A stretch of DNA of 64,000 nucleotides. Source: Penicillus capitatus (lineage: Eukaryota; Plantae; Chlorophyta). A program made the translations under genes and the position numbers. Each line of letters opens with the position of its first letter. Positions within the stretch are counted from its first letter, which is position 1. A model generated the notes under the pieces. The model worked only from the letters and a program-made list of their open reading frames with translations. It was not told the origin of the DNA and did not search any database. Shown in pieces: positions 1-48,360 of the stretch. The stretch lies in the NCBI GenBank assembly GCA_965649825.1, contig OZ287695.1:186001-250000 (forward strand). The letters are read 5' to 3'.

Positions 1-2426
1 ACTTGGAGGCACCAGCGTTGACGAGAGTCTAGATTTCGCAGTCAATCATCACAAAAGACCCATGCCTGATTACCTGTGCTATTTCTAAATGGCCGATGGA
101 CGACGCTAAGTGCAGAGGAGTATAACCATCAATGGTTTTGGCTGACACATCTGCCCGATGCTCAAGAAGTGTCTGTGGAGCACAACTGCAGCTAACTCGG
201 GACAATGGCATTATGATTCACCTTTACTAAATCCAAGTGTTCATAACGGGATGCGTGGTGCAGGGGAGTCCATCCACGATCATTCGCGGCATTGACTTTT
301 GCGCCATTGCGGAGCAAAACCTTCAGACAGAACCCTTTAGTCAGGACATCTGCATAGTCAAGAGAACCTTTGCAGCATCAAGGCGTCCTTTATTTGCTGC
401 TTCATGCAAGGGAGTCCAACCAATGTTGTCAACCGCATTCACGTTGGCTCGGTGGTTTTCACACAGAAGCTGTGCGAAGAACACACGTTGATAGGCGACT
501 TAGAAACAAAGGAATCACGAACAGGTTACCTTCACAATGTCAGCATGGTCGAATCTAGAAGCAAAGAAGACAGGTGTCCGTCTATCGACATCCACTGCTT
601 CCACCCCTGCTCCATTTGCAATGAGAACCTGATGTGTCTCATCGCATAAGAGTGCTACTGGGACAACTTAATTCCTCACTTCTGCAACTTGATGGTGGCC
701 GAAACCAGCTGCTTTGTGCAAGGACGTCGCTCGAATTGAATCTACTGAATTTACGTTGGCATTCGATTCCAACAGAAACTAAACCACAAGGCATTAAGAT
801 GGCAATGTACTCTTGCTGGTTTGGTGGAAAAGCTTGTTAGCAGCATACCCTGGTAACGTGGATTGATCCTTCTACTGCTGCCACGATCAACGGCGTCGAC
901 TGAACGGCGTTTCTGCTATCAACTTTTGCTCCGTGTCGGACGAGAACCTTCACATCAGCATCTGACAGTTTAGAGATCATAACCATGCAAAAATTCCGAA
1001 GGCTCATACATCAGCGCAATCTAACGCATCGTATCCGGCTGCCCAATGGAGAAGAGTCGAGTCCCTGCTTAGTGGATATCCTGACAGATTTGGGTCGTGG
1101 TAGACGGATTCGACATTGAGGCCCTCTAGTAGAACAGCTTCTAGAGTCACGTCGTCGTTATCTCGCAGACAACGAATTGCTTCCTAAAAGCAGATCTTAG
1201 AAATCATTACCGGCCACTAAAGATTTACGCTCAGGAGCTGCTGGTCTGTGAATTGCTTCATACGTTCACGCTCTTGTGCTAGGCGATCCCGTCGATTTTC
1301 ATTCTGCCATCACCATAAAGTAGTGGATAATGAGATGGCGAGAGATGTCATCGGGAACCTTAATAATCTTCGAAATCGTGTCCCAATGATGTCCGACGCT
1401 AGCGTAGACACTTGGATCTTGTAATCTGCACTGTTTTCCAAACGAAGTGATGCCGACGACCAGATCCAGTTCTGGCTTCCCTGCATTGATGTCACCGTTC
1501 GGCGCATTAGGAATCAACAAAGGACCACCAGAATCGCCTATTTGACACATCATTCGTGAATTCAACAGAAGGAAAGTGCATTCACGAGGAATACCGAAGC
1601 ACGTGCTCTGGGACTGATTCGGGGAATTGGCACAGATCATGTGTTTTTTTGGATGGAAGTCCAATGCTTTTGCACACGTATTGATCGGGGCGGAGACTAA
1701 GTTGTTCGCCATCTGCAGATAACGTGGTGCTTCTTTGTCTGTCGGTTTCTGCACCCCCCATCCAACAGCTGTGAACTTTTGACCCGCTCCAAAAGGGGAG
1801 ACTTGTCGAGCGAATGAAGGCAATGGGACGTCGACTTCTCCGTCAAGTTCGAGGACGGCGATATCGTTGCCATTGCGACTATTTCCCGTCCAGGAGCGGT
1901 GTGGATGTTTCTTTGCAGTTTTGAATCTCTATTCACCAAACGCGTTGCATTTCAGTCATTTCGCGACATGTGCACTCACTCGAACCAAATGGAGTCTTTG
2001 TCGGTCATTAGCGTTGCAGTGGACCTCGGGGCTTTGGTCAACCAGCTGTGAACCGTTGCAGGTAAGACAGTGTGCCGCTGTGATCAACCATCTGCGGCGA
2101 ATCACCACACCAGTGCACTCGCACACCTTATTATCCACTGTCTCCGAAGTTAATAGACAGACATAAGGAAACCGGCTCCTCGGCACATTCACTCCCTGTC
2201 CGATATAAACAATGTGACTCACGGGCGTCACGTGCCTAACATGGGCTGCCGTTACCCCTCTGATTATCGGATGGCCTTCGTTGGAAATAGAATCCGTTCC
2301 CGTCCCTGCGAAAAATGACTGTCGCCGACGAGGACGGTTCATATGGTAAAGACCTGTGTCGCCGAGAGTCGCAACCCATCCGATGGCGAAGAGAACAAGC
2401 ACAGTTTTCGCGAAAGCGTCACCCAT
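1..2426 (-). CDS. Secreted trypsin-like (S1) serine protease fused to an ankyrin-repeat array (T1); 3' end runs off the window
   Basis: The signal peptide is [22 protein letters not shown], and the spliced protein has TAAHC, DIAVL and GDSGGP. A phase-0 linker exon ([10 protein letters not shown]...LLS) leads to a 174-nt N-cap exon (1183-1010), six ankyrin exons and the start of a terminal exon TLVNAGASK (28-1). All introns are GT-AG and in frame. Confidence 0.9.
74..947 (-). repeat. Six single-repeat ankyrin exons of T1
   Basis: Exons are 947-849, 778-680, 628-530, 469-368 (102 nt), 320-222 and 172-74; the other five are 99 nt. All are phase 0, e.g. [33 protein letters not shown]. Confidence 0.92.
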
Positions 2427-26800: not shown

Positions 26801-28164
26801 TCGGCATACGACACATTTTTCTCAGAATGCGAGTTCTTGAGGCTACGTTAGAAGAGGCAGAAGCGGAGGAGGAGATAGAGGTTATAGCAAAAGACGAACA
26901 GGCAATCGAGATCGCCGAAAAAGCTCGTCAAATACTTGAGAGCACAATCGACCATGTTCTAATCCGCGAAATTATGGTCAAGGAGATCCAACAACTGCCC
27001 TGCATTCTGAAAGAATTCTCTAAACTTCTCGATGAGACCGTTAACGGAATAATGTACATGCTCGCATGTTCGCAACACTTAGAATGGAAGGAAATGGCGA
27101 AGATCACGGATATTTTGAAGCTCGCGAAGCACTCTCCGAAGCACAGTCATAAAGTGATCAGATTCATCTTGCAACTAGCCAAACACGTCGATAGTTGGTG
27201 CGACAAAGACGAATGCATCAGAAGGTTCAAGTGGGTCGCAGCATATGTGTCACATAACGCCGAAAAACTTTTGCCGACGATAACAAAAGGGTGTGGCGAC
27301 GAAAACCAGCGCGTGAATGAAGCAGCGAAAGAAGCCATCCCTCAAATTGTCGCGGCGGCTCCGCATTTCGCCAAACAACTTTTGCCGGAAATGACGAAGA
27401 AGTGCGACGACGAAGACTGGTTTGTGTGTGTAGCAGCGATAGAAGTCATCGGCCGAATTGTCGCGGCGGCTCCGCATTTCGCCAAAGAACTTTTGCCGGT
27501 GATGGTGAAGAAGTGCGAGGACGAAGACGAGTTCTTGCGTCTTTTAGCGATAGAAGCCATCGGCCAAATTGTCGCGGAGGCTCCGCATTTCACCAAAGAA
27601 CTCTTGCCGGTGATGACGAAGAAGTGCGACGACGATCACAACAGCGTGCGTGCGACGGCGATGGAAGTCGTCGACAAGATTGTCGCGGCGTCTCCGCATT
27701 TCGCAAAAGAACTCTTTCCGGTGATGATAAAGAGGTGCGACGACGAAGACTGGAGCATACGTGAAGCAGCGATAGAAGCCATCGGCCAAATTGTCGCGGT
27801 GGATCCGCAGCACGCCGGAGAGCTCATGCCGACGATGGCTACGGGGTGCGACGACGAAGACGACGAGGTGCGCTATGCCGCAAGAAGGGCACTTGAGCGT
27901 GTAAGCGCCGAAGAAGCCATTTCTTCGGTAATATCGTCTCCTTCTAATAACAAGGGCGGGTTTTTATTCTTCTTCGTGCAAAACTCATTCACGTTAGATC
28001 CCCCTGCAAAATCTAAAACGGTTCCCTTTATCTTGCACACAACTTCTTCACAAACGATTGGAAAATGGGACAAGGAAGCTATCGATGTGTTTATCGAGAA
28101 GTTGAGACAAGAATGCGATGAAGAGTTTCCCGGGCTTCTAGAGAACATTGGTATCAAAGAATAG
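23884..28164 (+). CDS. NLR-like STAND protein: helical N-terminal domain, NACHT NTPase and HEAT repeats; interrupted by an in-frame TAA at 26326-26328
   Basis: Walker A is GNPGSGKT and Walker B is LLMLDGLDE, followed by LLLSRP, IPVTAHILC and QFPHLTFHEYFAG. It has six 37-aa HEAT repeats and one 51-nt intron (25396-25446). Confidence 0.88.
27226..27891 (+). repeat. Six tandem 111-nt HEAT repeats
   Basis: The consensus is IGQIVAAAPHFAKELLPVMxKKCDDEDxxVRxxAIEA, with a DNA-level period of 111 nt (e.g. 27343 vs 27454). Confidence 0.92.
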
Positions 28165-29141
28165 GTTAGAAGCACATGTTATTTTGTGCGTTCACGGGTG
28201 TCTCTCGCGAACGATTCTACATGTCGCTTATTTTAGTCACTTTGTCAGAGTCTTCTATGATAGAAGCAGCAGTTGCCTATTCTCTCCATGCCAAGGTGTT
28301 GAAGAAGCATAAAACATCTATTCCACTTACCTCTCTCTATATCTGTCTTCAAGTTGAAATGGACGTTATGCTTGAAGTGTCGTATCATGGGCTCGATGTT
28401 CTTTCAAAAGTCCGGACGTTTAAAGAACCGCTCATTGTTTTAGACGAAATAAAGTTTCGAAAGCATAATTCTTGAATCTGTCTGTTTAGGTTGCGCTTTG
28501 CTCGGCCAGATGGAAAACGTATTCTTCTTTGACGAGTGTGCGAATTTCTACAGATTCGTGTCTTCGCACAAACTGTCATTTGCTCTGCATGTTCACGAAA
28601 ACCATTAAGGATTATCGATTGTGGGGATTAGCCGCATGTTGCGCACAGTTTGAAAGATCGAGTCACGCCGCGTTCGCGTCGTCTCGCGATCGAATTCTAT
28701 TCGAACGCTAACGGAATCCGACGTGACGTGTCGATGAGCCACAGAGAATAGATCGTCGAAAAGATTTGGTTTGCATCACTTGAACAGACCGAACGAAGTT
28801 CACTTATTCAATCTACGTTTCGTGTTCATTCGCGGCTTACAGGAACGAACGGGCTCTGCACGTCAAGGAACCTACCCGACCTGAGCAGGTTTGCGCGCAC
28901 AAGTTTGAACATAGTCGGTCTTATGTGGACATACGCCTCTGTTTGCCTTTTCGTCAGCAGAGGGTATCTGAACACGCACACTTCCGTTTCTACGCCACAT
29001 TCGCGGCTTCGGATCTGCGACGGTTCTCGCCTGAAAAGCCCCTGCTCCGAGCTGCCTTTCTGAAGTCACCCGCCCTGCGACAGTCCGAAGGTCACCATTG
29101 GCATCCTTCCAAAGGACTGCTGAGCGCATGACGTGTATAGA

Positions 29142-30506
29142 ATGGGAGGCAGATTGGCGAGCGTGATTCTCTTGATCCTCTCACTCTTCTGGCGCCCAGC
29201 ATTCAGTGACACAGGTATCTGTATGGCAGATAGCGTTTTCTGGCTAACAATATGTCTCCCTTACAGGGTCTGCCGGGAAATCGGACGGGCCGGACCAGTA
29301 TGCGAACATTCGCAGAGTAAGATGGCCGTGTTCTGCGGATTCTGCATGCTGAGGTATATCTTGTCTGCATGGACAGGGAGTGACTGTCAGCGGAGAACGC
29401 TTTCCGTACGTGTGCTACGTGTCCGTCACCAAACGAACCTTCAGTCCTCCTGTTTCTTCGGGGCATTACTGTGCTGGAGTGCTGTACCGCAGAAAATGGG
29501 TGATCACCGTGGCGCACTGCGTCTACGAGGTCGATGGAATCGTCGTCAAGCCCACACCGACTGTCTACTGCGGCTTCAACGACCGTTACAGAAAGTACAC
29601 AGCCCAAGTGAGCACTGATACGCGTGGAAGCGGACTGAGGTCGGCGGTTCTTGGTGGCAGTCTGCCAATGCGAAGAGAACACATCTGCACGATTCTTGGA
29701 CGGGAGACAGGCTTGACGGCTACGACATTGCCGTGGTCGAGCTGGAGAAAGAGATAGATCTCGACGGGCCCGAGGTCGCCGAACGGGACGTCGAGTTCAA
29801 CGACGATCAGAAGTTCGCGACGGTTGCATGGGGAAGAGTCTCGGACACCAAGAGGGCTCGCTATCTGCAGATGGCCGACAATCTCGTCTACGTCTCGCCG
29901 GAAGAGTGCAGAGAGCACTACGACGATCTCTCCACAGAGTCGCCTTGGATGTGCGCAAAATCGGCAGATCAGGAGCAGGACAGCTGTCGCGGTCGAACAC
30001 GCAGATCCGATTCCTTGTGCGGATGCAAACCCCCGCGTTGGTCGTTGCAGGTGACTGTGGAGGTCCACTGCTGATTCCTCACATGCCAGGGGGCGTCATC
30101 AAAGCGGGAGATCCGAAACGTGACTGGGTCGTCGGCATCAAAACCTACGGGATCATAGAATGCGACGGGAAGAATCCGGACGTCTACACCAGAATCGCTC
30201 CCTTTTGGGGCTGGATTTCGGGCATCATCGAAAAGGTGACGCATCTGACCCTCCAAATGACTCCGCGCTCGATGCCGTTCTTTCATGCAGGATGAATCTT
30301 CTGCGAAGGAGAGGCATGGAACGTCAGGACGTGAGGACGCACTTCCGCAGACTGTCGAAGACGGCGTGTTCTTCACTGTAAGTCGCCGGCAAGATGAGTG
30401 AGCTGTTTATACAAGAGGCGCGTGTGGTTAGGAAACAGTCAAGTCCGCGGAGAGAGATGATGGAACGAGATCGGATGTGGTTCGTGCGGACGGTTCGCAT
30501 TTCTAG
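29142..30506 (+). CDS. Secreted trypsin-fold protein T2 with catalytic Ser replaced by Cys (GDCGGP)
   Basis: The signal peptide is MGGRLASVILLILSLFWRPAFS, with TVAHC, DGYDIAVVEL and spliced QDSCRG-DCGGP (TGT at 30056-30058). A short acidic tail ends at TAG 30504-30506. Confidence 0.88.
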
Positions 30507-32264
30507 GACACTGGTCAGCATGGCGCAAAGAGGATCGCTTAGATCACACAGGCTGCCATGCTTTAGTATGATCTCTACTGACTGCTTCCGGGCGACAGTA
30601 GACTATTCAATGAGTCGTCTTTTCTGTTTTGGATTCGCTTCAATGGCTGTGAGAGTGACCATCGGAGTTGCGGTGTCAGCCTCTGTTTTTCAAGAAGGGA
30701 TTCTCAGTATCGTCTGAGTGCTGTATTGGTGGTTTTTCAGACGAACGATTTTATTATTTGTTCGCTCTATCTGATAACAGAGGTTCTAATGTCTTCCCTC
30801 AGCATTGAGAACATTGGCCAGGCGATGCCGATCAAATCCGTTTGAGACCCAGACGGGAGAGATCGAATGCGACAATACATGCCAATCATTACCGACTATG
30901 AATGGAAGGGTAGGAGATAAAGTCAAGAGCGCTACAGTCGACGTGCTTGCCGCTCTATGAGTCATGTCGTGGTCGCCAACAATGTAAGCGATTGGAGCAC
31001 TTCTTCGTTGTTTCTGGCCGAACAACTTTAATCACTTCGGTACACTGTTGTGGCGATCATAGGCAGTCGCGAAGATGTGACATAAGGCGATATGACGGCT
31101 GTCACTCCTTCACAGCGGACATCATGTAACAAAGGTGGGAAGGCGCTCTATAAGAGAAAGTTTTGCCAGGAGCAGTTAATTTAAAGTTCATGGTGCGAAA
31201 CAAAAAACAGATCTATTTGTAATTACCCGGAAGAGTGTAGCCTTTTGCAGTTTCAACTGTGGTTCGCTTATGAATGCAATTCGTGTCTGGTATTGTTGCT
31301 CCAAGCATGTTTTTTGTGAAAAAATATTAAGGCGTTAGCGGGGATGTTTCGATACGATAACGGGACGCGGCGAGTTTTCGGATACAAAAATGTTACGTGA
31401 CGGATGCTGCAGAGCCACTTGAGCCGGAGCTTCGGTCAGAAGAAGTCTAGAGCACAAAGGATCACGTAGGTACGGAGTAAAACCAACGGCAGAACCAATT
31501 GAGCTTCTCTGGTTATTCATCATTTCTTAGAGAAATTCCGCTCGAGGCTGTGGAAGGTTTCCTGGTATAATCCCGTCGCGATAACTTAAAGATCCTTCAG
31601 TCGTTAACGAAGAAAACGATGTTGCTCTAAAAGAGCATCGAACACGCGAATTCAGACTATTTGTAATATACTGAGATAGGTGATTTGATCATAGCTACCG
31701 CAAAAACCGTAACCATCCCATTTTCTGTCGTGCGGAGAAGCGTGTTCCTTTTGCAAATACGAGCGGAGAAACTTTGAATCTGACGGGATACAAATTCGTG
31801 AAAGCTGCATTTCGATAACAAGAACTTACCAACGACAGAAACTCTGTTTCCCTAACGCCACCCGATATTCGAACGAAGTTCCTCGTTCCTTAACACCAAA
31901 GGCGGATCGCAATCGTAAGCGTATGATGCTGACACAGTATCGACAGAATGAAACCATTTATCTCGTTTAGTTTTGTGACGCTAGTTTAAAAATTGCCCGG
32001 AATTGTTTCTGCGAGCCACTTGATCGTGGAGAAATCGGACATACAAACTCAGACGCACTTCTCTGAGAGAATTTGCTATTACCAGCCTTTGCACCTTCCA
32101 CACCAGTCCGACGCGCACGCTTCGTTCGGTGCCTTGTCGACAAAAACGCATTCGACCGGATGCACCGTTTGGAAGGTCGCGGTTCCACGTCGATACTTTA
32201 AAGAAAGCCCAAAGCCTAACCAACGTCTGCACGGCGTTATCTGAAGCTCACGAAGGTCACTGCG

Positions 32265-33509
32265 ATGTCTCACAGAATGCGAAGGACACTAGCAAGAGCG
32301 ACGCTGGTGATCTTTACAGTCTTACGGTTCACGATCCTCGCAAGCGCAGTTCAGCGTAAGATCTCACTCAGTGGACGGCAAAGACAACGCTTCGTGCAGG
32401 AATGGAAACTGTTTCTGAGTCGACGGACCAGATCCCGAACATAGGCGGCGTAAAGCGACCGACGATAGACGAACCCCTGCGGTTACGATATGTATTGTGT
32501 GTTGCGCAGGGCGACGATGCGCCGCCGAACCGTTTTCCTTACGTGTGCTATCTGTCCATTGCGAGAGAGACTCCAGATGATCCCGCATCCGATCCCAAGA
32601 GAACATACTGCACCGGAATTCTGTTTCTGAAGGAATGGGCGATCACGGCGGCGCACTGCGTCGATATGGAGACAGATGAAAAGCCGGTCGGGAGAACCCC
32701 CACAGTCTGGTGTAACTTGCCCGAACGCAGTAAACGGCACGAGATACAAGTTAGGATTCATGGGCTGGAGTGGAGCGCATCGACCTGCGGCATTCTGTCT
32801 GCAGGGTGTGAGCACAGCAGCCATATACTTACACGAAAAATGGAGTGGGGATAGCCACGATGGCTATGACATCGCCGTGCTGAAGCTCGATGAGGCTTTC
32901 GATCTTCCAGTGCCCACTTTTGTTCACGAGACTCGCCATTTCGACGAGAGGCGAGAGTTTACTGCCGTCGGCTGGGGACGGGACTCGAACGACAGAAAGC
33001 CATCGCGCCTGCAGATGGCAAATAGCTTGAGGTATCTGTCGAACGATGTGTGTGGCAAACGACTCCATTTCGAAGACAGTCTCCCCATCATCTGCGAGCA
33101 ATCGCCACATCATGCTCAGGACAGCTGCAAAGGTTGTTTACTCCATGAGCGTGTCTTCATCGAGAGAAGCGTTTCGCTGTTTTGGCAGGGGACTCTGGAA
33201 GTCCATTGCTCATTCCTGATAAGGCAAAAGGAAGAATGAGCTTAGGAAACCCAGAACACGATGTCATCGTTGGCATTAAGTCGTTTGGAAAGAAGAGCTG
33301 CGACGGCAAAGGTCCAGATGCTTATGCAAGCGTCGGTCCTGTTTGGGATTGGATTATAGATACCGTCCACGAGGTTCGACATTCGATGATCCTTCATGAC
33401 ACTGTCCTCTCATTGCGATGCCTTGGTTCAGAAACAAACTCCCGCAAGGACGAACGGGGAGAGTTTTCCACCAGAGGACAGCGAAGACCTTACCAGAGTC
33501 CGAAAGTAG
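32265..33509 (+). CDS. Secreted trypsin-like serine protease T3
   Basis: A hydrophobic N-terminus is followed by PNIGGG, RFPYVC, TAAHC, DGYDIAVLKL and QDSCKG-DSGSP. Intron positions are shared with the paralogues. Confidence 0.88.
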
Positions 33510-34924
33510 AACACTCTTCATCTTACGATGCAAACAAGAAGAAGAGTGAGACTTGAAGAGAAGCCTGGTCCAGGGGTGATTTACTCCAGGGGGGTTAAAG
33601 TCAATGATGTGAGAAGGGACAAAGCAGCAGTGTTTGTAAACAACTTGCACAGCCGTTGAGCTGACGACCAGAATCGGGACAACAGAGACGTCTTTGGCAT
33701 CCGACCCATGACGTGATAGTGACGCAGAATTCGCTGGTTTCGATGTGCAAAGCGAGGAAGGATATCAAGCGCGGAAGGTTGGGAAGCACAACGTGCTATC
33801 GATTACCGACCACAAAACTGAAGATAAGCCTTTCAGTGGGCATATGCAGTTAGTTGACACTCCGTTGACTTCCTGTTATTCATATCGCATAGCCATAAGA
33901 CCATTTGATTGAAATAAACTCTCAGTGTGTCGATGGACCCTCAGGTCATGACCGTTTCTCAGCGAATCGGGGCTCGTCCTCCATGAAAGAGATCGCCGCA
34001 GATAGACGATGTGCCAATTCCTGTGGACAGACAGCTGAAGCAGAAGAATCTACACGTCCAGGAGCGAGGCGACAACTCTTTCCATCCTATCAAGACGAAG
34101 GGCGACTGCCCAAACGTTAACTCCGATAGCGCGAGAGGATGACACCGAAAAGCGTTCGAAAGTGCTACTTCTCGTGACAGCTCGGCAATCGATTAGCGCT
34201 CGTGTATCCGACGAGACAGATAATCATAGTTTTAGAGTTTCATTGCGTGTTATGCTTTCAATGTGTTTCGTACAGAGGAACACGCTTGCATCACTCGAAA
34301 GGATAGAAGAGAAAAGGGCCGACCAACACAACTTGTCACCACCGCTTACTCGCTCTTTCTGTCGAAACAAGTTGTACCAGCTTACGTCACGCAGTAGACA
34401 GACTAAAAAACAGTGTTTTTCTTTCCGCGCACTTAACAGCAGTAATGGACGCCGACTTTCAAAACTCCAACTCTTAACATCGCTGAGCGCGACTTCCGTT
34501 TTGCCGTCTCTTGCGCGGTAGCTTTTGGAGCTGCCATCTTTCCCGTAAGGAGCTTATCGTGTGCTCCTGTCCATTTCTCATCGACTCCAAATTATTAAGC
34601 CCAGGGATGACACATCAATTTGACAGGACGCCGATTCGTGGAGTCTATCTCTCTCACACCGACATTCGACTCATTCAGAAACACAATAGAAAGTTACTCG
34701 AAATCTACTGCGATGCGGAACCTACGAGCTGTGCGAAATAAATACATAAAAGCGATTTGATTTCGCAAGTGCACACGCAGTTCGTTATTTCTTGACTGCT
34801 TTAAACGCCAACGATTTCAACGCTCACTCTTTTGTTTTAAACGCTTAACGGCACACTCTACGCGACCGCCGGTCCTCCGCAAGGAAACCTTTGTTTCGAA
34901 ACGTCTTACACAAAAGAAAACGAA

Positions 34925-37900
34925 ATGGATTCTCCCCATAGAAGTTGTCGCAGCCGACTGGTGTCGAGGAAAACGAACAACGGAATTGTCAAAGCGATAC
35001 TCCTCGTCTTTACCGTCACGTGGCCTACGGCTTACGCCGGTGTCGGTTTTCGCTTAGGCGGCACAGGTAACATCTTCTTCTTCGAAGATAGCGCTGACGG
35101 TGACGCTCAGAGAGAGGGAAAACGTCTCCCAAAAACTATCGCCCAAACATTCTAGCGGCACGTGCCCGACTCGACATCAAATCCTCCTGATTGACGTGTA
35201 CTGACTGCGCTGTCCAGGGAATGGATGTGACCGAAGGAAGATTTCCTTACGTGTGTGATTTGACTTATCTGACAGCTGATGAAGAATACGTCTGTACTGG
35301 AATTCTGTTTCGTCAGAGGTGGGTGATTACGGCCGCACATTGCGTCGAACCAGACGGAGAACAGCCCATCGGACAAACCCCTACCGTACGATGCGGCTTC
35401 AGCGACCTCTCCGAACAAGACTTGGCACCAGTAAGCGTTCATCCGTCGTGAGCGTGTCAAGACGCCAAAATGGCACCTGTTTCAGACACGAAGCACCGTA
35501 TCGACTTTTGCACACGAATCGCGTTTGCAGAATATGCACCATGACTATGACATAGCCGTGCTCGAACTGGACGATCCCATCAACCTTGCCGAGCCTATCT
35601 TAGCCCGTCAAGATTACGACTTCGACACGAGTCAAAACTTCACAGCTGTCGGCCGGGGAAAAACGGAAACTGGCCAATATCCGAATATCTTGCAGATGGC
35701 GACTGGAATGTCTTATATGGCGCCGACGAAATGCAGCAAACGTCTGGAATATGAAATCAAGGATGGAATGCTTTGTGCTAAGTCACTGGACCGTAAGCAG
35801 GGAATTTGTGACGGTCAGTCAGCGCCTCATCCGTCTTCTTCTCTCTAAACATACTGGTGGACCTTTTAGGAGATTCTGGAGGTCCCTTGCTTATTCCGGA
35901 CAGCACGAATGGCAATATGAGCAATGGAAATCCAAGACGAGATCGAATCGTCGGCATCGCCTCGTTTACTCGGGGAGTATGCTCGGGTAAGAATCCAACT
36001 GCTTACACGAGCATCGGGTACTTTTTGCCCTGGATTACGGCCGTCATCGATCAGGTTGTCAGCTCGAATGGTCATGACATCTGTTTTCCGAAACGTACGT
36101 GTTCGCGTCGCAGAATGTCTATCCGAGCAGTGCACGCAAACGAAGTCTCGATCAAGAAGAGCAAAGCGCGACAAACGTCTATGACAGGACGCAGATCGAG
36201 GTGAGGCATGCGTATCCAAAACCGGACGAAAAACAAGACGCTTCTGTCACCGAAGGATGCTATCACTCTCATAATAGAAGACGACGACGTGGGACTGAAG
36301 AAAGTCCTTAAAAAGGGTCTCTATGTCGACGCTGTCTATCACAACGCCGAGCTGTCAGGGTATCCGATGGGGCCAGAGTCAACACTGATCCACTGGACGG
36401 CGGCATACGATGCGAAGAAATGTGCAAAGGTGTGTCGCAAAACAACGACCGTCGCCGTTGGAAGCGCTTCCCATAATTGAGCTGTCTTGTTATATCGCGA
36501 ACCTTCCTCGCACTCTGCTATGTTCTTCTCAGGTTCTTGTAAAACACGGCGCGGGAGTGGACCGCGTGACCGCTGACGGAATAACGCCCCTGCACGTCGC
36601 AGCTTTTTTCGGATCTGTTTCCGTGGCAAAGGTTGGTACAACCATTGAAGAAATAATAAAGAATTCCTTTGCCGACAAGATTATGAGGGAATGCCTTTGT
36701 TAGGTCCTTATTGAGTTCGAGGCTAGCGTCAATGCAGCAGACGCGATTGGGGCAACTCCACTGCATACAGCAGTAGAGTACGGCAACGACAGTGTGGTCA
36801 AGGTATCGATGACGCCTTGCTTCAGACCTCCGCCTCACTACAAAGACGTGAAGGTGCTCGTTGAAAATGGAGCTGACGTCGACGCCGTTGACGACGGCAA
36901 GTGGACGGCGTTGCATCATGCTGTGTACTACGACCGCCTCGAGATCGCGCAGGTCGGTATTGGCCATTGGCGGGCGCCCTGCCTGCGCTGCGTACATCTC
37001 CGACACTTCTTCCATAGATGCTTGTCGACAGCGGTGCAGACATTGCTGCGCGAACGAATCAACGCTGGACTGCGGCGCATGTGGCCTCGCGATATGGACG
37101 TACTGACATCACGAGGGTGATCCTTTGTTCGCTTTTGGTTTCTTGATTACGAAAGTCATCCGACAGGTTCTACTCGACAAAGGTGCCGACGTCAAAGCCG
37201 TGACAGAGTCTGGACGGACGCCTCTGCATCTCGCGTCGTTCGGTGGGCATCTTAACACAGCAAAGGTGCATCTACAATGCGCGTAGCCCATCTCTGGTTG
37301 CAGTGGTGAATTCGACAGGTGTTGTTAAAGAACGGTGCAGAGGTGAACGTTGCTGACGCCATTGGACGGACGCCACTTCACGAAGCAGCACGTAGCGGTC
37401 ATTTTGCAACCGCTGAGGTCGCCGTCTTTCTCTTTCGCTTTGTGGAGTTCGTCTGTGTTTAGATCTTGGTGCGTGAAGGGGCAGATATCGACCGAGTCGA
37501 CAACGAATTATGGACGGCTCTGCTTTTTGCATCCCGTTACGGAAACGTCAAGATCGTCGAGGTCTCCTTTGCCACTTTTTGTGACTGTGAATGATCAGAT
37601 GACGACAACAGATGCTGATACGTAAGGGGGCAGACGTTGATGTCATACGGACAGATGGATCTACTGCGCTTTGCATGGCATCAATTTTCGGATACAGCGA
37701 AATTGTGAACGTAATACTTGCTTCGTCTTATTTTTGTGTTACGAGGATCATTCAACAGGCCTTAGTAGAAGAGGGTGCTGCCGTCGATGTTGTTCTAAAA
37801 AACAGCGGCACCCCACTCCACTTTGCATCATTTAACGGACACCTGGAGATAGCGAAGGTGATCGACGTTGTGCTCTTTCTTCTCCGGCAGTAGAACGCAT

Positions 37901-42300: not shown

Positions 42301-42937
42301 CATCTGCCGACGCTGGCGAAGGGGTGCGTCGACGAATACAATGGTGTGCGTGCAGAGCGATAAAGGCGATCGGTCGCATTGTTTCAGCTGTGCCGCAATA
42401 CGCCGACGATTATCTGCCGACGCTGGCGAAGGGGTACGTCGACGGACACGAAGACGTGCGCTATGCTGCAAGAAAAATTTTGGAAAGTGTAAAACCTAGA
42501 GAGACTATTCCCTCGGCAATATCATTTACATCCACTAATAAAAGAAGATCTTTATTCTTCTTCATGCAAAACTCATACACGTAAGGTCTCCCTACAAAAT
42601 CTAAAACGCTTCCCTTTATCTTGCATACAACTTCTTCACAAGCGATTGGAAAATGGGACAAGGAAGCTATCGATGTGTTTATCGAGAAGTTGAGACAAGA
42701 GTGTTGATATACGTGAAAGCGGGCGCAAAAGTAGAAAGTAGTCTTTTTTACAGAATGCGAGAGTTTTTTGCAAAACACCGTTTTAGACTACGCAGCATGA
42801 CGTCATGATGCCATCATGCTTCTTGTAATGATGCGACTGGTTCTTTTTCCTTTCTTCTTCCCACTTCATCGTCAGGTCCACGACAGTGTGATGAGGAGTT
42901 TCCCGGGCTTCTAGAGAACATTGGTATCAAAGAATAG
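42301..42937 (+). pseudogene. 5'-truncated relic of a NACHT-HEAT paralogue (last ~1.5 HEAT repeats and C-terminus)
   Basis: It has a 111-nt repeat (42301 vs 42412) and a 3' end nearly identical to 27980-28164. It carries a frameshift, a premature TAA and an insertion. Confidence 0.88.
42705..42885. mobile_element. 181-bp solo-LTR-like insertion
   Basis: It is absent from the paralogous site at about 28113, has TG...CA termini and is flanked by a direct repeat GTGT (42701-42704, 42886-42889). Confidence 0.75.
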
Positions 42938-42946
42938 GTTGGAAGC

Positions 42947-43152
42947 TGACGGGTACGCGAGAACGGTTCTGGCCCTACGGACCGGACAGACTGTCCGCTT
43001 CCTGACGTGACAGGAGTCCGCGTGGGCCAGGGGTATTTATGTGACAGGCCGCACCATGCTGTAGTCTTTGCATCGACTCAGCACCGTCTCTTCCGACTTC
43101 GTGTACGCGTCGGCGCGTTCGCGTCGCGCCAGTTGTCTGCGTATCCCCGACA
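42947..43152. mobile_element. 206-bp solo-LTR-like insertion
   Basis: It is absent from the paralogous site at about 28169 and has TG...CA termini and a 5-bp TSD GAAGC (42942-42946, 43153-43157). It also has imperfect terminal inverted repeats and an internal TATTTAT at 43034. Confidence 0.85.
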
Positions 43153-44119
43153 GAAGCACATGTTATTTTGTTCGTTTACGAGTATTCGATTGCAAACGAT
43201 TCTACATGTCGATTGTCTGAGCTATTCTTCCAAACTCTTCCACAAGGAAGCGTTAGTTGCCTATTCTCTCACTGTTTATTTTTGAAGGACCGTAAAACGC
43301 GTGTTCTACTCCTCTCTTTCTCAAATTTCAAGTCAAAGTGGACGTTGTGCTTGGTGTGTCGTATCATGGGCTCGATGTTCTTTCAAAGGTCCGTACGTTT
43401 AAAGAACCGCTCATTGTTTGAGACGAAATAAAGTTTCGAAAGTATAATTCTTGAATCTGTCTGTTTAGGTTGCGCTTTGCTCGGCCGGATGGAAAACGTA
43501 TTTTTCTTTGACGAGTGTGCGAATTTTTACAGATTCGTGTCTTCGCACAAAATGTCATTTGCTCTGCATGTTCACGAAAACCATTAAGGATTATCGATTG
43601 TGGGGATTAGTCGCATGTTGCGCACAGTTTGAAAGATCGAGTCACTCCGCGTTCGCGTCGTCTCGCGATCGAATTCTATTCGAACGCTAACGGAATCCGA
43701 CGTGACGTGTCGATGAGCCACAGAGAATAGATCGTCGAAAAGATTTGGTTTGCATCACTTGAACAGACCGAACGAAGTTCACTTATTCAATCTACGTTTC
43801 GTGTTCATTCGCGGCTTACAGGAACGAACGGGCTCTGCACGTCAAGGAACCTACCCGACCAGAGCAGGTTTGCGCGCACAAGTTTGAACATAGTCAGTCT
43901 TATGTGGACATACGTCGCTGTTTGCCTGTTCGTCAGTGAAAGGTATCTGAACACGAAGACTTCCGTTTCTACACCGCGTTCGCGGATTCCGATCTGCGAC
44001 GGTTCTCGCCCGAAAGCCCCTACTCCGAGCTGCTTTACCGAGGACACCCGCCCTGCGACAGTCCGAAGGTCAGCATCGGCATCCTTCCGGAGGACTGCTG
44101 AGCGTGTGACGTGTACAGA

Positions 44120-45528
44120 ATGGGAGGCAGATTGGCGAGCGTGATTCTTTTGATCCTCTCACTCTTCTGGCGCCCAGCATTCAGTGACACAGGTATCTGT
44201 ATGGCAGATAGCGTTTTCTGGCTAACAATATGTCTTCCCTACAGGGTCTGCTGTGAAATCGGACGGGCCGGACCAGTATGCGAACATTCGCAGAGTAAGA
44301 TAGATGACCGTGTTCTGCGGATTCTGCATGCTGAGGTATATCTTGTCTGCATGGACAGGGAGTGACTGTCAGCGGAGAACGCTTTCCGTACGTGTGCTAC
44401 GTGTCCGTCACCAAACGAACCTTCAGTCCTCCCGTTTCTTCGGGGCATTACTGTGCTGGAGTGCTGTACCGCAGAAAATGGGTGATCACCGTGGCGCACT
44501 GCGTCTACGAGGTCGATGGAATCGTCGTCAAGCCCACACCGACTGTCTACTGCGGCTTCAACGACCGTTACAGAAAGTACACAGCCCAAGTGAGCACTGA
44601 TGCGCGTGGAAGCGGACTGAGATCGGCGGTTCTGGTGGCAGTCTGCCAATGCGAAGAGAACACATCTGCACGATTCTTGGACGGGAGACAGGCTTGACGG
44701 CTACGACATTGCCGTGGTCGAGCTGGAGAAAGAGATAGATCTCGACGGGCCCGAGGTCGCCGATCGGGACGTCGAGTTCAACGACGATCAGAAGTTCGCG
44801 ACGGTTGCATGGGGAAGAGTCTCGGACACCAAGAGGGCTCGCTATCTGCAGATGGCCGACAATCTCGTCTACGTCTCGCCGGAAGAGTGCAGAGAGCACT
44901 ACGACGATCTCTCCACAGAGTCGCCTTGGATCTGCGCAAAATCGGCAGATCAGGAACAGGACAGCTGTCGCGGTCGAACACGCAGATCCGATTCCTTGTG
45001 CGGATGAAAACCTGTGTTGGTCGTTGCAGGTGACTGTGGAGGTCCACTGCTGATTCCTCACATGCCAGAGGGCGTCATCAAAGCGGGAGATCCGAAACGT
45101 GACTGGGTCGTCGGCATCAAAACCTACGGGATCATAGAATGTGACGGGAAGAATCCGGACGTCTACACCAGAATCGCTCCCTTTTGGGGCTGGATTTCGG
45201 GCATCATCGAAAAGGTGACGAATCTGAACCGCCACACGCCTCCGCGCTGGATGCGGTTCTTCGTTGCAGGATAAAGCTTCTACGAAGGAGAGGCGGGGAA
45301 CGACAGGACGTGAGGACGCACTTCCGCAGACTGCCGAAGACGGCGCGTTCTTCACTGTAAGTCGCCGGCAGGATGAGTGAGCTGTTTGTGCAAGAGGCGT
45401 GTGATCAGGAAACAGTCAAGTCCGCGGAGAGAGACGACGGCATAAAACCGGAAGCAGCTCGTACGAGTGGTTCGCATTTCGAGGATACTAGTCAGCATGG
45501 CCCAGAGAGGATCGTGGAGATTGCATAG
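44120..45528 (+). CDS. Secreted trypsin-fold protein T5 (near-identical duplicate of T2) with GDCGGP
   Basis: The exon structure matches T2, with TGT at 45035-45037. The tail is 15 aa longer than that of T2. Confidence 0.88.
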
Positions 45529-46371
45529 TCAGACATGCTTTGTTACGATCCCTGCCGATTGCTTTCGGACGGCAGTCGATTCTTCGATGCATCGCCTTTT
45601 TCTGTTTTGGATTCGCTTCAGTGGCTCTAAGAGTGGCCATCAGAGTTGCGGTGTCGGTCTCTGCTTTTCAAGAGAGGGTTCTCAGTGTCGTCTGAGTGCT
45701 GTCTTGGTGGTTTTTCAGACGAACGATTTTATTATTTGTTCGCTCTATCTGAGAACGGAGGTTCTAATGTCTTCCCTCGGCATTGAGAACATTGGCCAGG
45801 CGATGCAGATCAAATCCGTTTGAGACCCAGACGGGAGAGATCGAGTGCGACAATACATGCCAATCATTACCGACTATGAATGGAAGGGTAGGAGATAAAG
45901 TCATGTGAGTTGCAGTCGACGCGCTCTCAGCTCTATAAATCATATGGCAGACGCCAACATAATGATCGATTGAAACACTTCTTCGTTGTTTCTGGCCTGA
46001 CAACTTCAACATCTTCCGTACACTGTTGCTACAGTCGCAGGCACCGTTACAGAGATATAACGTAGGGCGTTGTGACAGCTGTCACTCATTAGCAGCGGGG
46101 AAGAGTGTGTAACACAATAGGAGATCGAGTGCCATGTAACAGCAAGTCTTTGTGAACAACTGTCTGATCCCAATACGACCATGATGCTACTAATAGAAAC
46201 TGAACGGGTGATTGTAACCATTTATCGTTGCTGCGTTCCTGACCTTAAGCTTGCTTGTGCGTCACAGCACGTTATTTGGAAAGTCGCGGTTCAACAGCAA
46301 TTCCTCGAAGAAAGCCGAGAACGAACGAACGTTTGCGTAACATCGTTCTAAAGGACACGAAGGTCACTGCG

Positions 46372-47611
46372 ATGTCGCCTAGAATGCAAAGAAGAGTAGC
46401 AAATGCGATGCTCGGTGTCGTTTCGACCATATGGCTCACGATGCTCGCAGAAGCAGTTCAAAGTAAGACCTCACTCAGTCGACGACAAAGACGAACGTTT
46501 GCTGCAGGAATGAACACCTTTTCTGAGTTGACGGACAAGATCTCGAACATCGGCGGCGTATAGCAACACAGACAGCACAAACCCCTGCGGTTACGATTTA
46601 TCGTGTATGTTGCGCAGGGTGAAGATGCGCCGCCGAACCGTTTTCCTTACGTGTGCTATCTGTCCATTGTGAGAGAGACTTCAGATCATCCCGCATCCAA
46701 TCCCAAGAAAACATACTGCACCGGAGTTCTGTTTCAGAAGGAATGGGTGATCACAGCGGCGCATTGCGTCGAAATGAAGGCAGATCAAAAGCCAGTCGGG
46801 AGAACCCCCACAGTCTGGTGTGACTTGACCGAACGCAGCAAGCGGCACGAGATACAAGTGAGGATTCGTGGGCGGGAGTGGAGAGCATCGACCTGAGGCA
46901 TTCTGTCTGCAGGGTGTGAGCACAGCAGACACACACATACACGAACAATGGAGTGGGGATAGCCACGATGGTTATGACATCGCCGTTCTGAAGCTCGATG
47001 AGGCTTTCGATCTTCCAGTGCCCACTTTTGTTCACGAGACTCGCCATTTCGATGCGAGGCAAGAGTTTACTGCTGTCGGCTGGGGACGGGACTTGAACGA
47101 CAGAAAGGCATCGCGCCTGCAGATGGCAAATAGCTTGAGGTATCTGGCGGATGATAAATGTCGACAAAACTTCAGTTTGCCAGACGATCATTCCACTATC
47201 TGCGCGGACTCGCCGAATAAAACTCAGGACTCCTGCAGCGGTAGTCCACTCCATTCGTGTGCCTTTTTCGAGAAAAGTACTCCGTTGGTTTGGCAGGTGA
47301 CTCTGGAGGTCCATTGCTCATTCCTGATAAGGATGACAAAGGAGAAATAAGCTCAGGGAATCCGGAAGAAGATGTTATCGTCGGAATTAAGTCATTCGGA
47401 AAGAAGAAGTGCAACGGGCGTAATCCAGATGTTTATGCAAATATCGGCCTATTTTGGAACTGGATCACGAAAATCGTCGACGACGTTCGACATTCGATCG
47501 ATCGTGACAATACCCTCTAAATGTCCTTCGTTGTTTTAGGACCAAACTCCCACAACAGAGAATGGAGAGAGTCCTCCACAAGAGGACAGCAACAATCTTA
47601 ACAGCGTCTAA
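46372..47611 (+). CDS. Secreted trypsin-like serine protease T6 (paralogue of T3)
   Basis: A hydrophobic N-terminus is followed by SNIGGG, TAAHC, DGYDIAVLKL and QDSCSG-DSGGP. Confidence 0.88.
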
Positions 47612-48360
47612 AAATGGAACACTCTTCATTGCATGTTACAAACAAGAAGAGTGAGATGTGGAGACAACACAAGTCCTGGGGTGATGATTTACTCCAGGGG
47701 GGTTATTATTATTATTTGAGAAACGGCAAGGCAGCTATGTTTGTAAGTAGCTGACAGAGACAGTCCATTGACGACGACCAGATTGATGCTATCGACAACC
47801 GATCTGTGACGTGACGTTTACAGCTTCCATTCGCGTGCAGCCGAAAAGCTCACAGCAAAGCATCGCATCTTTCCAACTCTCGCACTTGTCGCTCTGGAAA
47901 CAGTTTCACGATTAACTGCGCTAGAGGCAACCCGAAGTCCTCGCCGTCATAAGGCGATCGCGCCTGCGTCCTCAATCAAACCTTTTGTCGTCGTTTTTTT
48001 TTTTCAAACGCGTTCGACTGCGCAGCTGTATGTGATGCAAACCGAGTTTTTATGACAAGTAAATGCCGTAAGAATGGCCTTGCCTGGTGATCTACAATAG
48101 TTTGAGGTTGAAGAACGTTGATGTGTAGGAACAATGATATTCACCAGACAACAGTACTAGGCATCACCAGCTTCACGGCTACTTTTCATTGTTGTTCTCT
48201 CACTCGAGAGACCTCGAGTCATGTTTTTCTGAACGAGAGCTCACAAGCGTGCACTTTGGCGCGAGCGAGGAGCCAACGGCTTCGACAGGGACGTTCGGCA
48301 GTGAAGTACGACAAACGCAACAACGGTGCGCGCACTGACGACCCTGAACTCGCCGCGTCC

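What the first reader, a model, noticed from the sequence alone, without database searches (positions are those of the whole stretch)
29142..30506. Trypsin-fold proteins with a His-Asp-Cys triad (GDCGGP), kept in two copies
T2 (TGT 30056-30058) and T5 (TGT 45035-45037) retain the signal peptide, His (TVAHC), Asp (DIAV), S1 Asp189 and intact splice sites, but the nucleophile codon is Cys. Established: GxCGG is the motif of viral 3C-type chymotrypsin-fold cysteine proteases, while engineered S195C trypsin is almost inactive. Inference: a cellular secreted cysteine trypsin, a redox-switchable enzyme, or a pseudoprotease decoy or cofactor in a cascade.
Basis: partly seen in the sequence, partly recalled or inferred. 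Interest (0 to 1): 0.75.

Follow-up and report, generated by a model that had tools for sequence, protein, structure and literature searches.

The report
Green-alga trypsin homologues with catalytic cysteine
Two neighbouring genes of a siphonous-type green alga encode secreted trypsin-family proteins in which the catalytic serine is replaced by cysteine; a second lineage keeps the change under purifying selection, so the protein is either a natural "thiol-trypsin" or a conserved inactive protease look-alike.

Summary
T2 (29142-~30400) and T5 (44120-~45380) are intact spliced genes. They have five GT..AG introns and encode a signal peptide plus an S1A/trypsin domain (Pfam 1.6e-29; AF2 domain pLDDT >90; best PDB folds enteropeptidase, factor XIa, kallikrein). 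His57, Asp102, Gly193, Asp194 and Asp189 are kept. TGT (Cys) sits exactly at the Ser195 column.

All five Ser paralogues in the window use TCT, so one C>G change made the Cys. It is the ninth, unpaired cysteine.

The window comes from an unnamed green alga whose closest named relatives are Caulerpa and Bryopsis. S1 proteases are known to be expanded in that group.

The Cys is not private. A collinear locus in a second ENA assembly (about 80% DNA identity, dS 0.43) keeps TGT, every splice site and the whole active site. dN/dS there is 0.14 (CI 0.08-0.23), lower than for the adjacent Ser genes (0.20 and 0.375).

T2 and T5 are part of an older ~15-kb duplication whose gene core was homogenised by gene conversion.

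The protein is an S1A member, not a relative of viral 3C proteases. No comparable intact S1 gene with GDCGGP was found elsewhere.

Activity and expression are untested. I put an active Cys-nucleophile protease at about 0.42 and a pseudoprotease at about 0.38.

The parts
29142..29214 (+). T2 exon 1: start codon and signal-peptide-like N-terminus (MGGRLASVILLILSLFWRPAFSDT)
   Evidence: It is homologous to the first exon of paralogue T0 and conserved in L001/L002.
29267..29316 (+). T2 exon 2: propeptide ending ...QYAN|IRR. Ile in IRRG aligns with Ile16 of IVGG.
   Evidence: The pre/pro region evolves fast (dN/dS 0.5-0.9).
29377..29607 (+). T2 exon 3: N-terminal barrel with Cys42, TVAHC (His57 codon 29515-17, Cys58). 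Ala56 is replaced by Val and Gly43 by Ala.
29661..29991 (+). T2 exon 4: Asp102 (29724-26, YDIAV), AWG (Gly140 replaced by Ala), Cys168/Cys182, Asp189 (29979-81), Cys191.
30051..30235 (+). T2 exon 5: G193-D194-C195 (TGT 30056-58), family-specific LLIP...G.P..D..VGI loop, Thr214-Tyr215-Gly216, Cys220, Asp226, C-terminal helix.
30291..30401 (+). T2 exon 6: acidic, poorly conserved C-terminal tail. TGA at 30399-401 if unspliced; a possible GTAAGT donor at 30378. The 3' end is unresolved.
   Evidence: (10-20% divergence). AF2 pLDDT is about 50 here.
44120..45380 (+). T5, the second Cys copy. Exons: 44120-44192, 44245-44294, 44359-44589, 44642-44972, 45030-45214, 45270-45380. Cys codon 45035-37, His 44497-99, Asp102 44705-07, Asp189 44960-62.
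   Evidence: It differs from T2 by 4 amino acids over exons 1-5.
27768..33700 (.). First copy of the ~15-kb-spaced segmental duplication. It carries T2 and the Ser paralogue T3 (32501-33355, GDSGSP).
   Evidence: Identity to the second copy is a mosaic of 70-100%.
42356..47800 (.). Second copy of the duplication. It carries T5 and the Ser paralogue T6 (46609-47481, GDSGGP).
35215..36066 (+). T4, a Ser paralogue (GDSGGP, TCT). Used as a selection control.
1359..2426 (-). T0, a Ser paralogue on the minus strand (GDSGGP, TCT). Its signal-peptide exon is homologous to that of T2.

Best explanation
Shown: T2 and T5 are real, intact genes maintained by selection. They belong to the S1A (trypsin) family that is expanded in bryopsidalean-type green algae. 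Inside a lineage-specific tandem array, one paralogue changed its nucleophile codon from TCT (Ser) to TGT (Cys). This happened before two sampled lineages split. The gene was later duplicated with its neighbour, and the two cores were homogenised by gene conversion. Inferred mechanism: the product enters the secretory pathway and loses its signal peptide and a short propeptide, so that Ile16 (IRRG) can pair with Asp194. It then acts through its active site as a Cys-His-Asp thiol protease or acyl-enzyme former that prefers basic P1 residues (Asp189, plus Asp226). Conservative changes at four otherwise near-invariant sites (Gly43Ala, Ala56Val, Gly140Ala, Ser214Thr; 43, 56 and 214 adjoin catalytic residues) may re-tune the site for the larger sulfur. 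Catalysis itself is not shown.
For: Gene and fold: Pfam Trypsin 103.7 bits. The AF2 domain has pLDDT >90, and Foldseek TM-scores to solved S1A proteases are 0.8-0.86. Cys aligns to Ser195. Origin: all five Ser paralogues use TCT, and an NJ tree puts T2 inside the local T0/T3/T4/T6 clade. Conservation: the collinear locus L001/L002 from another assembly keeps TGT, all splice sites, His57, Asp102, Gly193, Asp194, Asp189 and all disulfide cysteines. Selection: dN/dS is 0.146 over 247 codons at dS 0.43, against 0.20 (T3) and 0.375 (T4) for the adjacent Ser genes. The bootstrap CI is 0.08-0.23, with 0 of 500 replicates at or above 1. Free thiol: there are 9 cysteines against 8 in the Ser paralogues, so Cys195 has no partner. 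Co-substitutions at 100%/95%-conserved columns are retained in both lineages. Chemistry: the chymotrypsin fold can run on a Cys nucleophile, as in viral 3C proteases (established knowledge).
Against: Engineered S195C trypsin and thiol-subtilisin are nearly inactive on ordinary substrates (PMC6642262, citing Higaki 1989 and Wilke 1991). Every characterised natural S1 member lacking Ser195 that I know of is non-catalytic. Non-Ser residues (G, T, A, R, F, D) occur at this column in roughly 10% of related domains. Cys is also one of only six single-step missense outcomes from TCT, so it could be an arbitrary inactivating change. The four co-substitutions could equally be drift of catalysis-specific residues after loss of activity. 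Only two lineages are available. There are no expression, protein or activity data. A free thiol beside two disulfides in an oxidising compartment may not stay reduced.
Confidence: 0.42

Rival explanations
1. Conserved pseudoprotease. The Cys is simply an inactivating replacement. The protein keeps its fold and substrate-binding cleft and works by binding, for example as a decoy for inhibitors, as a cofactor or regulator of the active Ser paralogue encoded next to it (T3/T6, co-duplicated with it), or as a ligand-binding protein like insect serine-protease homologues or oomycete glucanase-inhibitor proteins.
For: Thiol-trypsin is essentially inactive (PMC6642262). Nucleophile replacements are common in this family (GDGGGP, GDTGGP, GDAGGP and others among the top 150 hits; G and D). 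Four further near-invariant sites (three adjoining catalytic residues) have changed, as expected once catalysis is dispensable. Purifying selection is equally expected for a binding protein. The Cys gene is always followed by a T3-type Ser gene, in both duplicates and in L001/L002.
Against: His57, Asp102, Gly193, Asp194 and Ile16 are all retained along a long branch (about 60% divergence from paralogues) and in both lineages. dN/dS is lower than in the catalytically canonical neighbours. The replacement is the one residue that can still act as a nucleophile.
Confidence: 0.38
2. Redox-gated or disulfide-trapping protein. The unpaired Cys195 forms reversible mixed disulfides, with glutathione, a partner protein or a substrate cysteine. 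This would make the protein an oxidation-sensitive switch or a covalent trap, possibly linked to the oxidative wound response of a coenocytic alga.
For: Cys195 is the only unpaired cysteine in a secreted, disulfide-rich domain. An EF-hand NADPH-oxidase-like gene lies in the same window, which is circumstantial only.
Against: There is no direct evidence. Retention of the whole charge-relay and oxyanion apparatus is not required for a pure redox role.
Confidence: 0.12
3. Decaying or unexpressed duplicate genes (neutral evolution), or an assembly or sequencing artefact.
For: No transcript evidence could be obtained. T1 (23265-23608) shows that trypsin pseudogenes do exist in this array. The C-terminal tail and the 3' end are poorly conserved.
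Against: The reading frame and all ten splice sites are intact in five copies. dN/dS is 0.14, with 0 of 500 bootstraps at or above 1. TGT is present in two haplotigs of one assembly and two contigs of another.
Confidence: 0.04

Closest known systems
S1A trypsin/chymotrypsin-family serine proteases (Pfam PF00089; best solved matches plasma kallikrein, factor XIa, kallikrein-6, enteropeptidase light chain, chymase)
   Same: Same fold, the same order His57-Asp102-residue 195, the GD-x-GGP oxyanion motif, Asp189 in the S1 pocket, three canonical disulfides, the I-x-x-G N-terminus with Asp194, and a secretory signal.
   Different: The nucleophile is Cys, not Ser. There are also Val56, Thr214, Ala43, Ala140 and Asp226, and a family-specific 10-residue insertion after GDCGGPLLIP.
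Expanded S1 peptidase family of Bryopsidales (Ostreobium 189 S1 / 159 trypsin-domain genes, Caulerpa lentillifera 57; Bryopsis sp. KO-2023 GMH36861/GMH36881)
   Same: These are the closest named homologues (35-40% identity). They share the RFPY..C motif, an extra disulfide, the LLIP/GxP..D..VGI loop, tandem multi-copy organisation, and frequent signal peptides.
   Different: All retrieved members of those species have Ser (or G/D) at the nucleophile. No Cys-type orthologue was found in them.
Engineered thiol-trypsin (rat trypsin S195C; Higaki, Evnin & Craik 1989; Wilke et al. 1991) and thiol-subtilisin
   Same: The identical chemical change, O to S at residue 195 in an otherwise intact trypsin active site.
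   Different: Those are laboratory constructs with about 10^5-fold loss on amides (figure from memory). This one is natural, conserved under purifying selection and accompanied by four further active-site-shell substitutions.
Viral 3C/3C-like chymotrypsin-fold cysteine proteases (MEROPS clan PA, families C3, C4, C30, C37 and others)
   Same: The same clan-level fold and a GxCGG nucleophile motif with a His general base.
   Different: There is no specific relationship. Best viral fold matches are S1-type Ser proteases of large DNA viruses (E 1e-16 to 1e-12), while RNA-virus polyprotein proteases score only E about 1e-7 to 1e-6 with TM 0.36-0.43. T2 is a spliced cellular gene with disulfides, a signal peptide and zymogen-type features, all absent from 3C enzymes.
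Serine-protease homologues / pseudoproteases (insect clip-domain SPHs, haptoglobin, azurocidin, HGF, oomycete GIPs)
   Same: S1 fold with the catalytic Ser replaced, often secreted, under selection, and acting with active paralogues.
   Different: Those carry non-nucleophilic residues (Gly, Ala, Tyr and others) and often lose His57 too. Here the replacement is a potential nucleophile and the rest of the triad is intact.
Plasmodium SERA proteins (papain fold with Ser in place of the catalytic Cys); named from memory as the mirror-image case
   Same: A natural swap of the nucleophile atom within a conserved protease fold, in a multi-copy tandem family.
   Different: Opposite direction (Cys to Ser), a different fold and a different organism.

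Membership tests
S1A trypsin family (PF00089) | Profile match above the curated threshold | tested here: met
   Pfam Trypsin E 1.6e-29, 103.7 bits against a cut-off of 20.6, covering residues 41-284. 430 PDB S1 chains match at E<1e-3.
S1A trypsin family (PF00089) | Double beta-barrel chymotrypsin fold | tested here: met
   AF2 mean pLDDT 82.9, with the domain mostly >90. Foldseek against PDB: top 50 all S1A, target-normalised TM 0.75-0.86.
S1A trypsin family (PF00089) | His57 and Asp102 in their conserved motifs | tested here: met
   TVAHC and YDIAV fall in invariant or 95% columns of the 44-sequence alignment.
S1A trypsin family (PF00089) | Ser195 nucleophile in GDSGGP | tested here: not met
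   GDCGGP, with TGT at 30056-58 and 45035-37. It is a homologue of the family, but not a serine peptidase by chemistry.
S1A trypsin family (PF00089) | Canonical disulfides 42-58, 168-182, 191-220 | tested here: met
   All six cysteines sit in invariant or 98% columns. Bond formation itself was not tested.
S1A trypsin family (PF00089) | Zymogen activation: new Ile16 N-terminus pairing with Asp194 | tested here: inconclusive
   The I-R-R-G aligns with [IV]-x-x-G of relatives and Asp194 is present. P1 is Asn (YAN|IRRG, and YSN|IRKG in the other lineage). Cleavage is not testable here.
Viral 3C/3CL cysteine proteases (clan PA(C)) | GxCGG nucleophile motif | tested here: met
   GDCGG is present. 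It is explained by a one-base change from GDSGG.
Viral 3C/3CL cysteine proteases (clan PA(C)) | Closest sequence and structure relatives are 3C-type enzymes | tested here: not met
   PDB and BFVD searches rank S1A enzymes first. Polyprotein 3C-like hits score only E about 1e-7 to 1e-6 with TM about 0.4.
Viral 3C/3CL cysteine proteases (clan PA(C)) | Encoded within a viral polyprotein | tested here: not met
   A six-exon cellular gene in a tandem array of paralogues, flanked by algal genes.
Serine-protease homologues (pseudoproteases) | One or more catalytic-triad residues replaced | tested here: met
   Ser195 is replaced by Cys.
Serine-protease homologues (pseudoproteases) | No peptidase activity | not testable with these tools
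   This requires recombinant or native protein assays.
Bryopsidales-type expanded S1 family | Closest named relatives and shared family-specific motifs | tested here: met
   Best named single-domain hits are Bryopsis sp. KO-2023 and Caulerpa lentillifera. They share the RFPYxC and GD.GGPLLIP...GxPxxDxxVGI features. The window's PI4K gene is 61% identical to Caulerpa, 51% to Bryopsis and 45% to Ostreobium.

The most novel reading that the evidence does not exclude
T2/T5 encode a naturally evolved, catalytically competent cysteine-nucleophile member of the cellular S1A trypsin family. As far as I know, this would be the first PA-clan cysteine peptidase of cellular origin that is nested inside a serine-protease family. 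The accompanying Ala43, Val56, Ala140 and Thr214 substitutions would be nature's solution to the 'thiol-trypsin is dead' problem. It would also be a living example of the Cys (TGY) state, one of only two residues (with Thr) reachable in one base change from both the TCN and the AGY serine codon sets, as postulated in Brenner's 1988 'tale of two serines' argument (cited from memory).
Probability: 0.35. Interest if true: 0.8.

Novelty: new variant of a known kind. Interest (0 to 1): 0.6.

Why it matters
Ser-to-Cys exchange in serine hydrolases is a textbook example of a 'conservative' change that kills activity. Natural chymotrypsin-fold cysteine proteases are known only from viruses. A cellular S1A gene that has carried Cys195 through substantial divergence (dS about 0.43) under stronger constraint than its Ser neighbours gives a concrete, testable natural experiment.

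If it is active, it shows which second-shell changes make a thiol work in a trypsin scaffold. That is useful for enzyme design and for understanding how nucleophiles switch in evolution.

If it is inactive, it adds a conserved pseudoprotease, paired with an active neighbour, to the poorly understood S1 expansion of siphonous green algae. Those proteases have been linked to extracellular protein degradation.

Tried and rejected
1. Word-indexed homologue search with full-length T2 returned only a frog protease. A 77-aa active-site query returned only the window's own ORF. These searches say little about other GDCGGP proteins.

3. JGI metagenomes: the search for related loci with the Cys-type alignment found no relative. 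The DNA pattern for D[S/T]CxGDCGGP gave 6 hits, about the chance number by my estimate, and none was an S1 gene.

4. GTDB genomes, same pattern: three Nannocystis hits are an unrelated Cys-rich protein. One Actinomycetota MAG carries a true trypsin gene with DTCQGDCGGP, but it is flanked by two frameshifts, so it is not usable evidence.

5. Literature: 'GDCGGP' occurs in 0 papers. I found no description of a natural S195C S1 member.

6. Rejected readings:
- Viral or 3C origin.
- Sequencing error: five independent copies carry TGT.
- Pseudogene or neutral evolution.
- Cys195 as half of a new disulfide: the cysteine count is odd and no new partner Cys exists.
- Recent duplication as the reason for T2/T5 identity: the mosaic of 70-100% identity and the 20% divergence of intron 5 point to gene conversion.

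7. Rfam found nothing in the window.

Full report
WHAT IS THERE

The window is eukaryotic DNA of about 50% GC with short GT..AG introns. A six-frame motif scan found a dispersed array of trypsin-like genes:
- T0, on the minus strand at 2426-1359
- T1, a degraded fragment at 23265-23608
- T2, at 29142-~30400
- T3, at 32501-33355
- T4, at 35215-36066
- T5, at 44120-~45380
- T6, at 46609-47481
- the start of another gene at the window's end, 63954-63992

T2 and T5 read GDCGGP. T0, T3, T4 and T6 read GDSGGP or GDSGSP, and all use the Ser codon TCT. The Cys codon is therefore one C>G change away.

GENE MODEL

T2 splices cleanly as 29142-29214 / 29267-29316 / 29377-29607 / 29661-29991 / 30051-30235 / 30291-... 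Every intron is GT..AG, and T5 has the same structure.

The product has these features:
- a signal-peptide-like N-terminus (judged by inspection only)
- a short propeptide
- a complete Pfam Trypsin domain (E 1.6e-29)
- an acidic tail

PDB sequence search aligns DSCRGDCGGPL onto DACKGDSGGPL of plasma kallikrein. A 44-sequence family alignment puts T2's His, Asp and Cys in the His57, Asp102 and Ser195 columns.

An AlphaFold2 model has pLDDT above 90 over most of the domain. It matches solved S1A proteases (enteropeptidase, factor XIa, kallikrein, chymase) with target TM-scores of 0.8-0.86. In the viral structure library the best matches are S1-type serine proteases of large DNA viruses. RNA-virus 3C-like proteases appear only at E about 1e-7 to 1e-6 and TM about 0.4. 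The protein is therefore a cellular S1A member. Its GxCGG motif resembles that of 3C proteases only because GDSGG became GDCGG.

ACTIVE-SITE DETAILS

These residues are retained: His57, Asp102, Gly193, Asp194, Asp189, Gly216, the I-x-x-G N-terminal motif (YAN|IRRG), and the cysteines of disulfides 42-58, 168-182 and 191-220, plus a family-specific pair. T2 has nine cysteines where the Ser paralogues have eight, so Cys195 is unpaired.

Besides S195C, T2 departs from columns that are 86-100% conserved in the other 43 sequences at four sites:
- Gly43 to Ala
- Ala56 to Val (hence TVAHC)
- Gly140 to Ala (AWG)
- Ser214 to Thr

Three of the four sites adjoin catalytic residues in the sequence (43 next to Cys42, 56 next to His57, 214 the usual partner of Asp102). 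That all four lie in the first or second shell of the catalytic centre is from my knowledge of the fold, because the model coordinates could not be inspected. Every one of these changes adds bulk. Residue 226 is Asp, as in several paralogues.

ORGANISM AND FAMILY

An exhaustive HMMER search gave 12,688 hits. The closest named single-domain relatives are proteins of Bryopsis sp. KO-2023 and Caulerpa lentillifera, at 35-40% identity.

A single-exon PI4-kinase gene in the window is 61% identical to Caulerpa, 51% to Bryopsis and 45% to Ostreobium. The source is therefore an unnamed green alga related to the siphonous Bryopsidales. It was probably sampled as ENA assembly ERZ25074695, contig ctg339180_25x.

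S1 peptidases are known to be strongly expanded in this group: Ostreobium has 189 S1 genes, 159 with a trypsin domain, and Caulerpa has 57 (bioRxiv 10.1101/2020.07.21.211367). An NJ tree places T2 inside a clade formed by the window's own paralogues. The Cys lineage therefore arose from a Ser ancestor within a local tandem expansion.

IS THE CYS PRIVATE, AND IS THE GENE NEUTRAL?

Neither is the case.

The search returned ORF fragments of the same gene from other contigs. P0013 is exon 5 of T5, on a 613-kb contig of the same assembly. That contig is 98.7% identical to the window, so it is a second haplotype.

P0012 and P0152 come from two contigs (L001, L002) of a different assembly, ERZ26696514. 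L001 and L002 are collinear with window 23.7-40.2 kb at 79-81% identity, intergenic DNA included. The gene order is the same: NACHT-HEAT gene, Cys-trypsin, T3-type, T4-type.

Their Cys-trypsin keeps TGT, every splice site, the triad, Asp189, all cysteines and the four co-substitutions.

| Gene compared between the two lineages | dN/dS | Other values |
|---|---|---|
| Cys gene (T2) | 0.146 | dN 0.063, dS 0.43, 247 codons |
| T3 (adjacent Ser gene) | 0.20 | |
| T4 (adjacent Ser gene) | 0.375 | |
| Cys gene, mature domain, bootstrap | 0.14 | CI 0.08-0.23; 0 of 500 replicates at or above 1 |

dS is similar across the three genes (0.37-0.44), which supports orthology. I cannot exclude that the two loci are ancient duplicates present in both organisms. 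Either way, the Cys has survived dS of about 0.43 of independent evolution under purifying selection.

T2 VERSUS T5

The two genes lie in a duplication with about 15 kb spacing that also carries T3 and T6. Identity along the block is a mosaic of 70-100%.

| Region (T2 vs T5) | Divergence |
|---|---|
| Exons 1-5 | 1% |
| Introns 1-4 | 3.6% |
| Intron 5 | 20% |
| Exon 6 | 10% |
| Immediate gene flanks | 7-12% |

These figures come; other parts of the duplicated block are down to about 70% identical. This pattern is the signature of gene conversion over the gene core in an older duplication. 'Two copies' is therefore not two independent retentions of the Cys.

HOW UNUSUAL IS IT?

Among the best 150 relatives, which carry more than 300 S1 domains, the nucleophile motif is GDSGGP 225 times. 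Non-nucleophilic variants (G, T, A, R, F and others) are not rare. GDCGGP occurs only in this gene.

The other searches added little:
- A DNA-pattern scan for D[S/T]CxGDCGGP found only chance matches in JGI metagenomes.
- In GTDB genomes the same pattern found one bacterial trypsin gene, in an Actinomycetota MAG, whose Cys-bearing segment is flanked by two frameshifts.
- 'GDCGGP' occurs in no paper of the library.
- I found no report of a natural S195C S1 member.

MECHANISM

Sequence alone cannot decide between an active thiol enzyme and a pseudoprotease.

For activity:
- The full charge-relay, oxyanion and activation apparatus is retained along a long branch and in both lineages.
- Constraint is tighter than in the Ser neighbours.
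- The replacement is the one residue that can still act as a nucleophile.
- Conservative substitutions around the active site could accommodate sulfur.

Against activity:
- Thiol-trypsin and thiol-subtilisin are essentially inactive (PMC6642262).
- Natural S1 members without Ser195 are, as far as I know, non-catalytic.
- Cys is one of only six single-step outcomes from TCT, so it could be an arbitrary inactivating change.
- The co-substitutions could be drift after loss of catalysis.

| Reading | Estimated probability |
|---|---|
| Cys-nucleophile protease or acyl-enzyme former | about 0.42 |
| Binding-only pseudoprotease, possibly partnered with the always-adjacent T3-type enzyme | about 0.38 |
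| Redox or disulfide role | about 0.12 |
| Non-functional | about 0.04 |

LIMITS

- There is no expression evidence.
- The 3' end of the gene is unresolved. There is a GTAAGT at 30378, a TGA at 30399 and a non-conserved tail.
- The signal peptide and the activation site are inferred by eye and by alignment.
- Only two lineages were available.
- The model coordinates could not be inspected for geometry.

Noticed in passing
window 23884-28164 (+); L001 2183-7820; L002 1329-7163: A large NACHT + HEAT-repeat (STAND/NLR-like) gene sits directly upstream of T2. It includes a 111-nt tandem repeat array at 27253-27918. In the window it is split into three ORFs, by stops or introns near 25446 and 26328-26341. 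Between L001 and L002 this gene is only 71-89% identical, while everything downstream is 98.6% identical. That hypervariability is reminiscent of immune receptors.
   Followed up: partly
window 23265-23608 (+): T1 is a degraded trypsin-gene fragment. WMITAAHC is kept, but there are in-frame stops and the Asp102 motif is lost. It lies just upstream of the NACHT-HEAT gene and is a pseudogene remnant of a T3-type paralogue.
   Followed up: partly
window 27768-33700 vs 42356-47800: A segmental duplication with about 15 kb spacing carries a Cys-type plus Ser-type gene pair. Identity is a mosaic of 70-100%, indicating repeated gene-conversion patches. T3 and T6 are 89-95% identical in their 5' half and 72-80% identical in their 3' half.
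   Followed up: partly
window ~30712-30762 (and 45690-45740; L001/L002 ~11340-11390): A ~50-nt block downstream of the Cys gene (TCGTCTG.GTGCTGT.TTGGTGGTTTTTCAGACGAACGATT) is almost identical in all four copies across both lineages, although the surrounding DNA is 20-30% diverged. Just upstream, a hydrophobic stretch (FCFGFASMAVRVTIGVAVSASVF) is open in one frame. This could be a 3'-UTR element or an unrecognised exon. There is no Rfam match.
   Followed up: partly
L015 2489-2517 (-), contig CAVUDJ010000021.1 (uncultured Actinomycetota MAG): A bacterial trypsin gene (VVGG..., LTAAHC, DWALIKL) has the nucleophile motif DTCQGDCGGPMF (TGC). The segment is flanked by two frameshifts, so it is either a pseudogene or a long-read assembly error.
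   Followed up: partly
proteins P0018, P0019, P0023 (Caulerpa lentillifera, JGI metagenome); L001/L002 16890-17159; L003 2599-2880: Several relatives fuse the trypsin domain to C-terminal ankyrin repeats and lack an obvious signal peptide. Ankyrin-repeat ORFs also lie about 1.5 kb downstream of the T4-type gene here. Part of this algal S1 family may therefore be intracellular.
   Followed up: no
window 19414-22091 (-): EF-hand pair plus ferric-reductase/FAD/NAD domains, that is, an NADPH-oxidase (NOX5/Rboh-like) gene, split over two long ORFs.
   Followed up: no
window 12997-14517 (+), 48118-49128 (+), 50206-54414 (-), 17812-18837 (-): Other genes in the window are a ubiquitin-like + PI3/PI4-kinase gene (plant PI4K-gamma type), a tRNA (uracil-5)-methyltransferase, a 1402-aa protein kinase in a single ORF, and an LRR protein.
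   Followed up: partly
window 63954-63992 (+): The start of another trypsin-like exon (GHKAPVGRFPYMC) runs off the end of the window, so the array extends further.
   Followed up: no
L001 vs L002, exon 6 and flanks of the Cys gene: The two contigs of the second assembly show the same mosaic as T2 and T5: exons 1-5 are 0.8% diverged, while exon 6 and the flanks are 7-10% diverged. It is unclear whether they are haplotypes or two converted paralogues.
   Followed up: no
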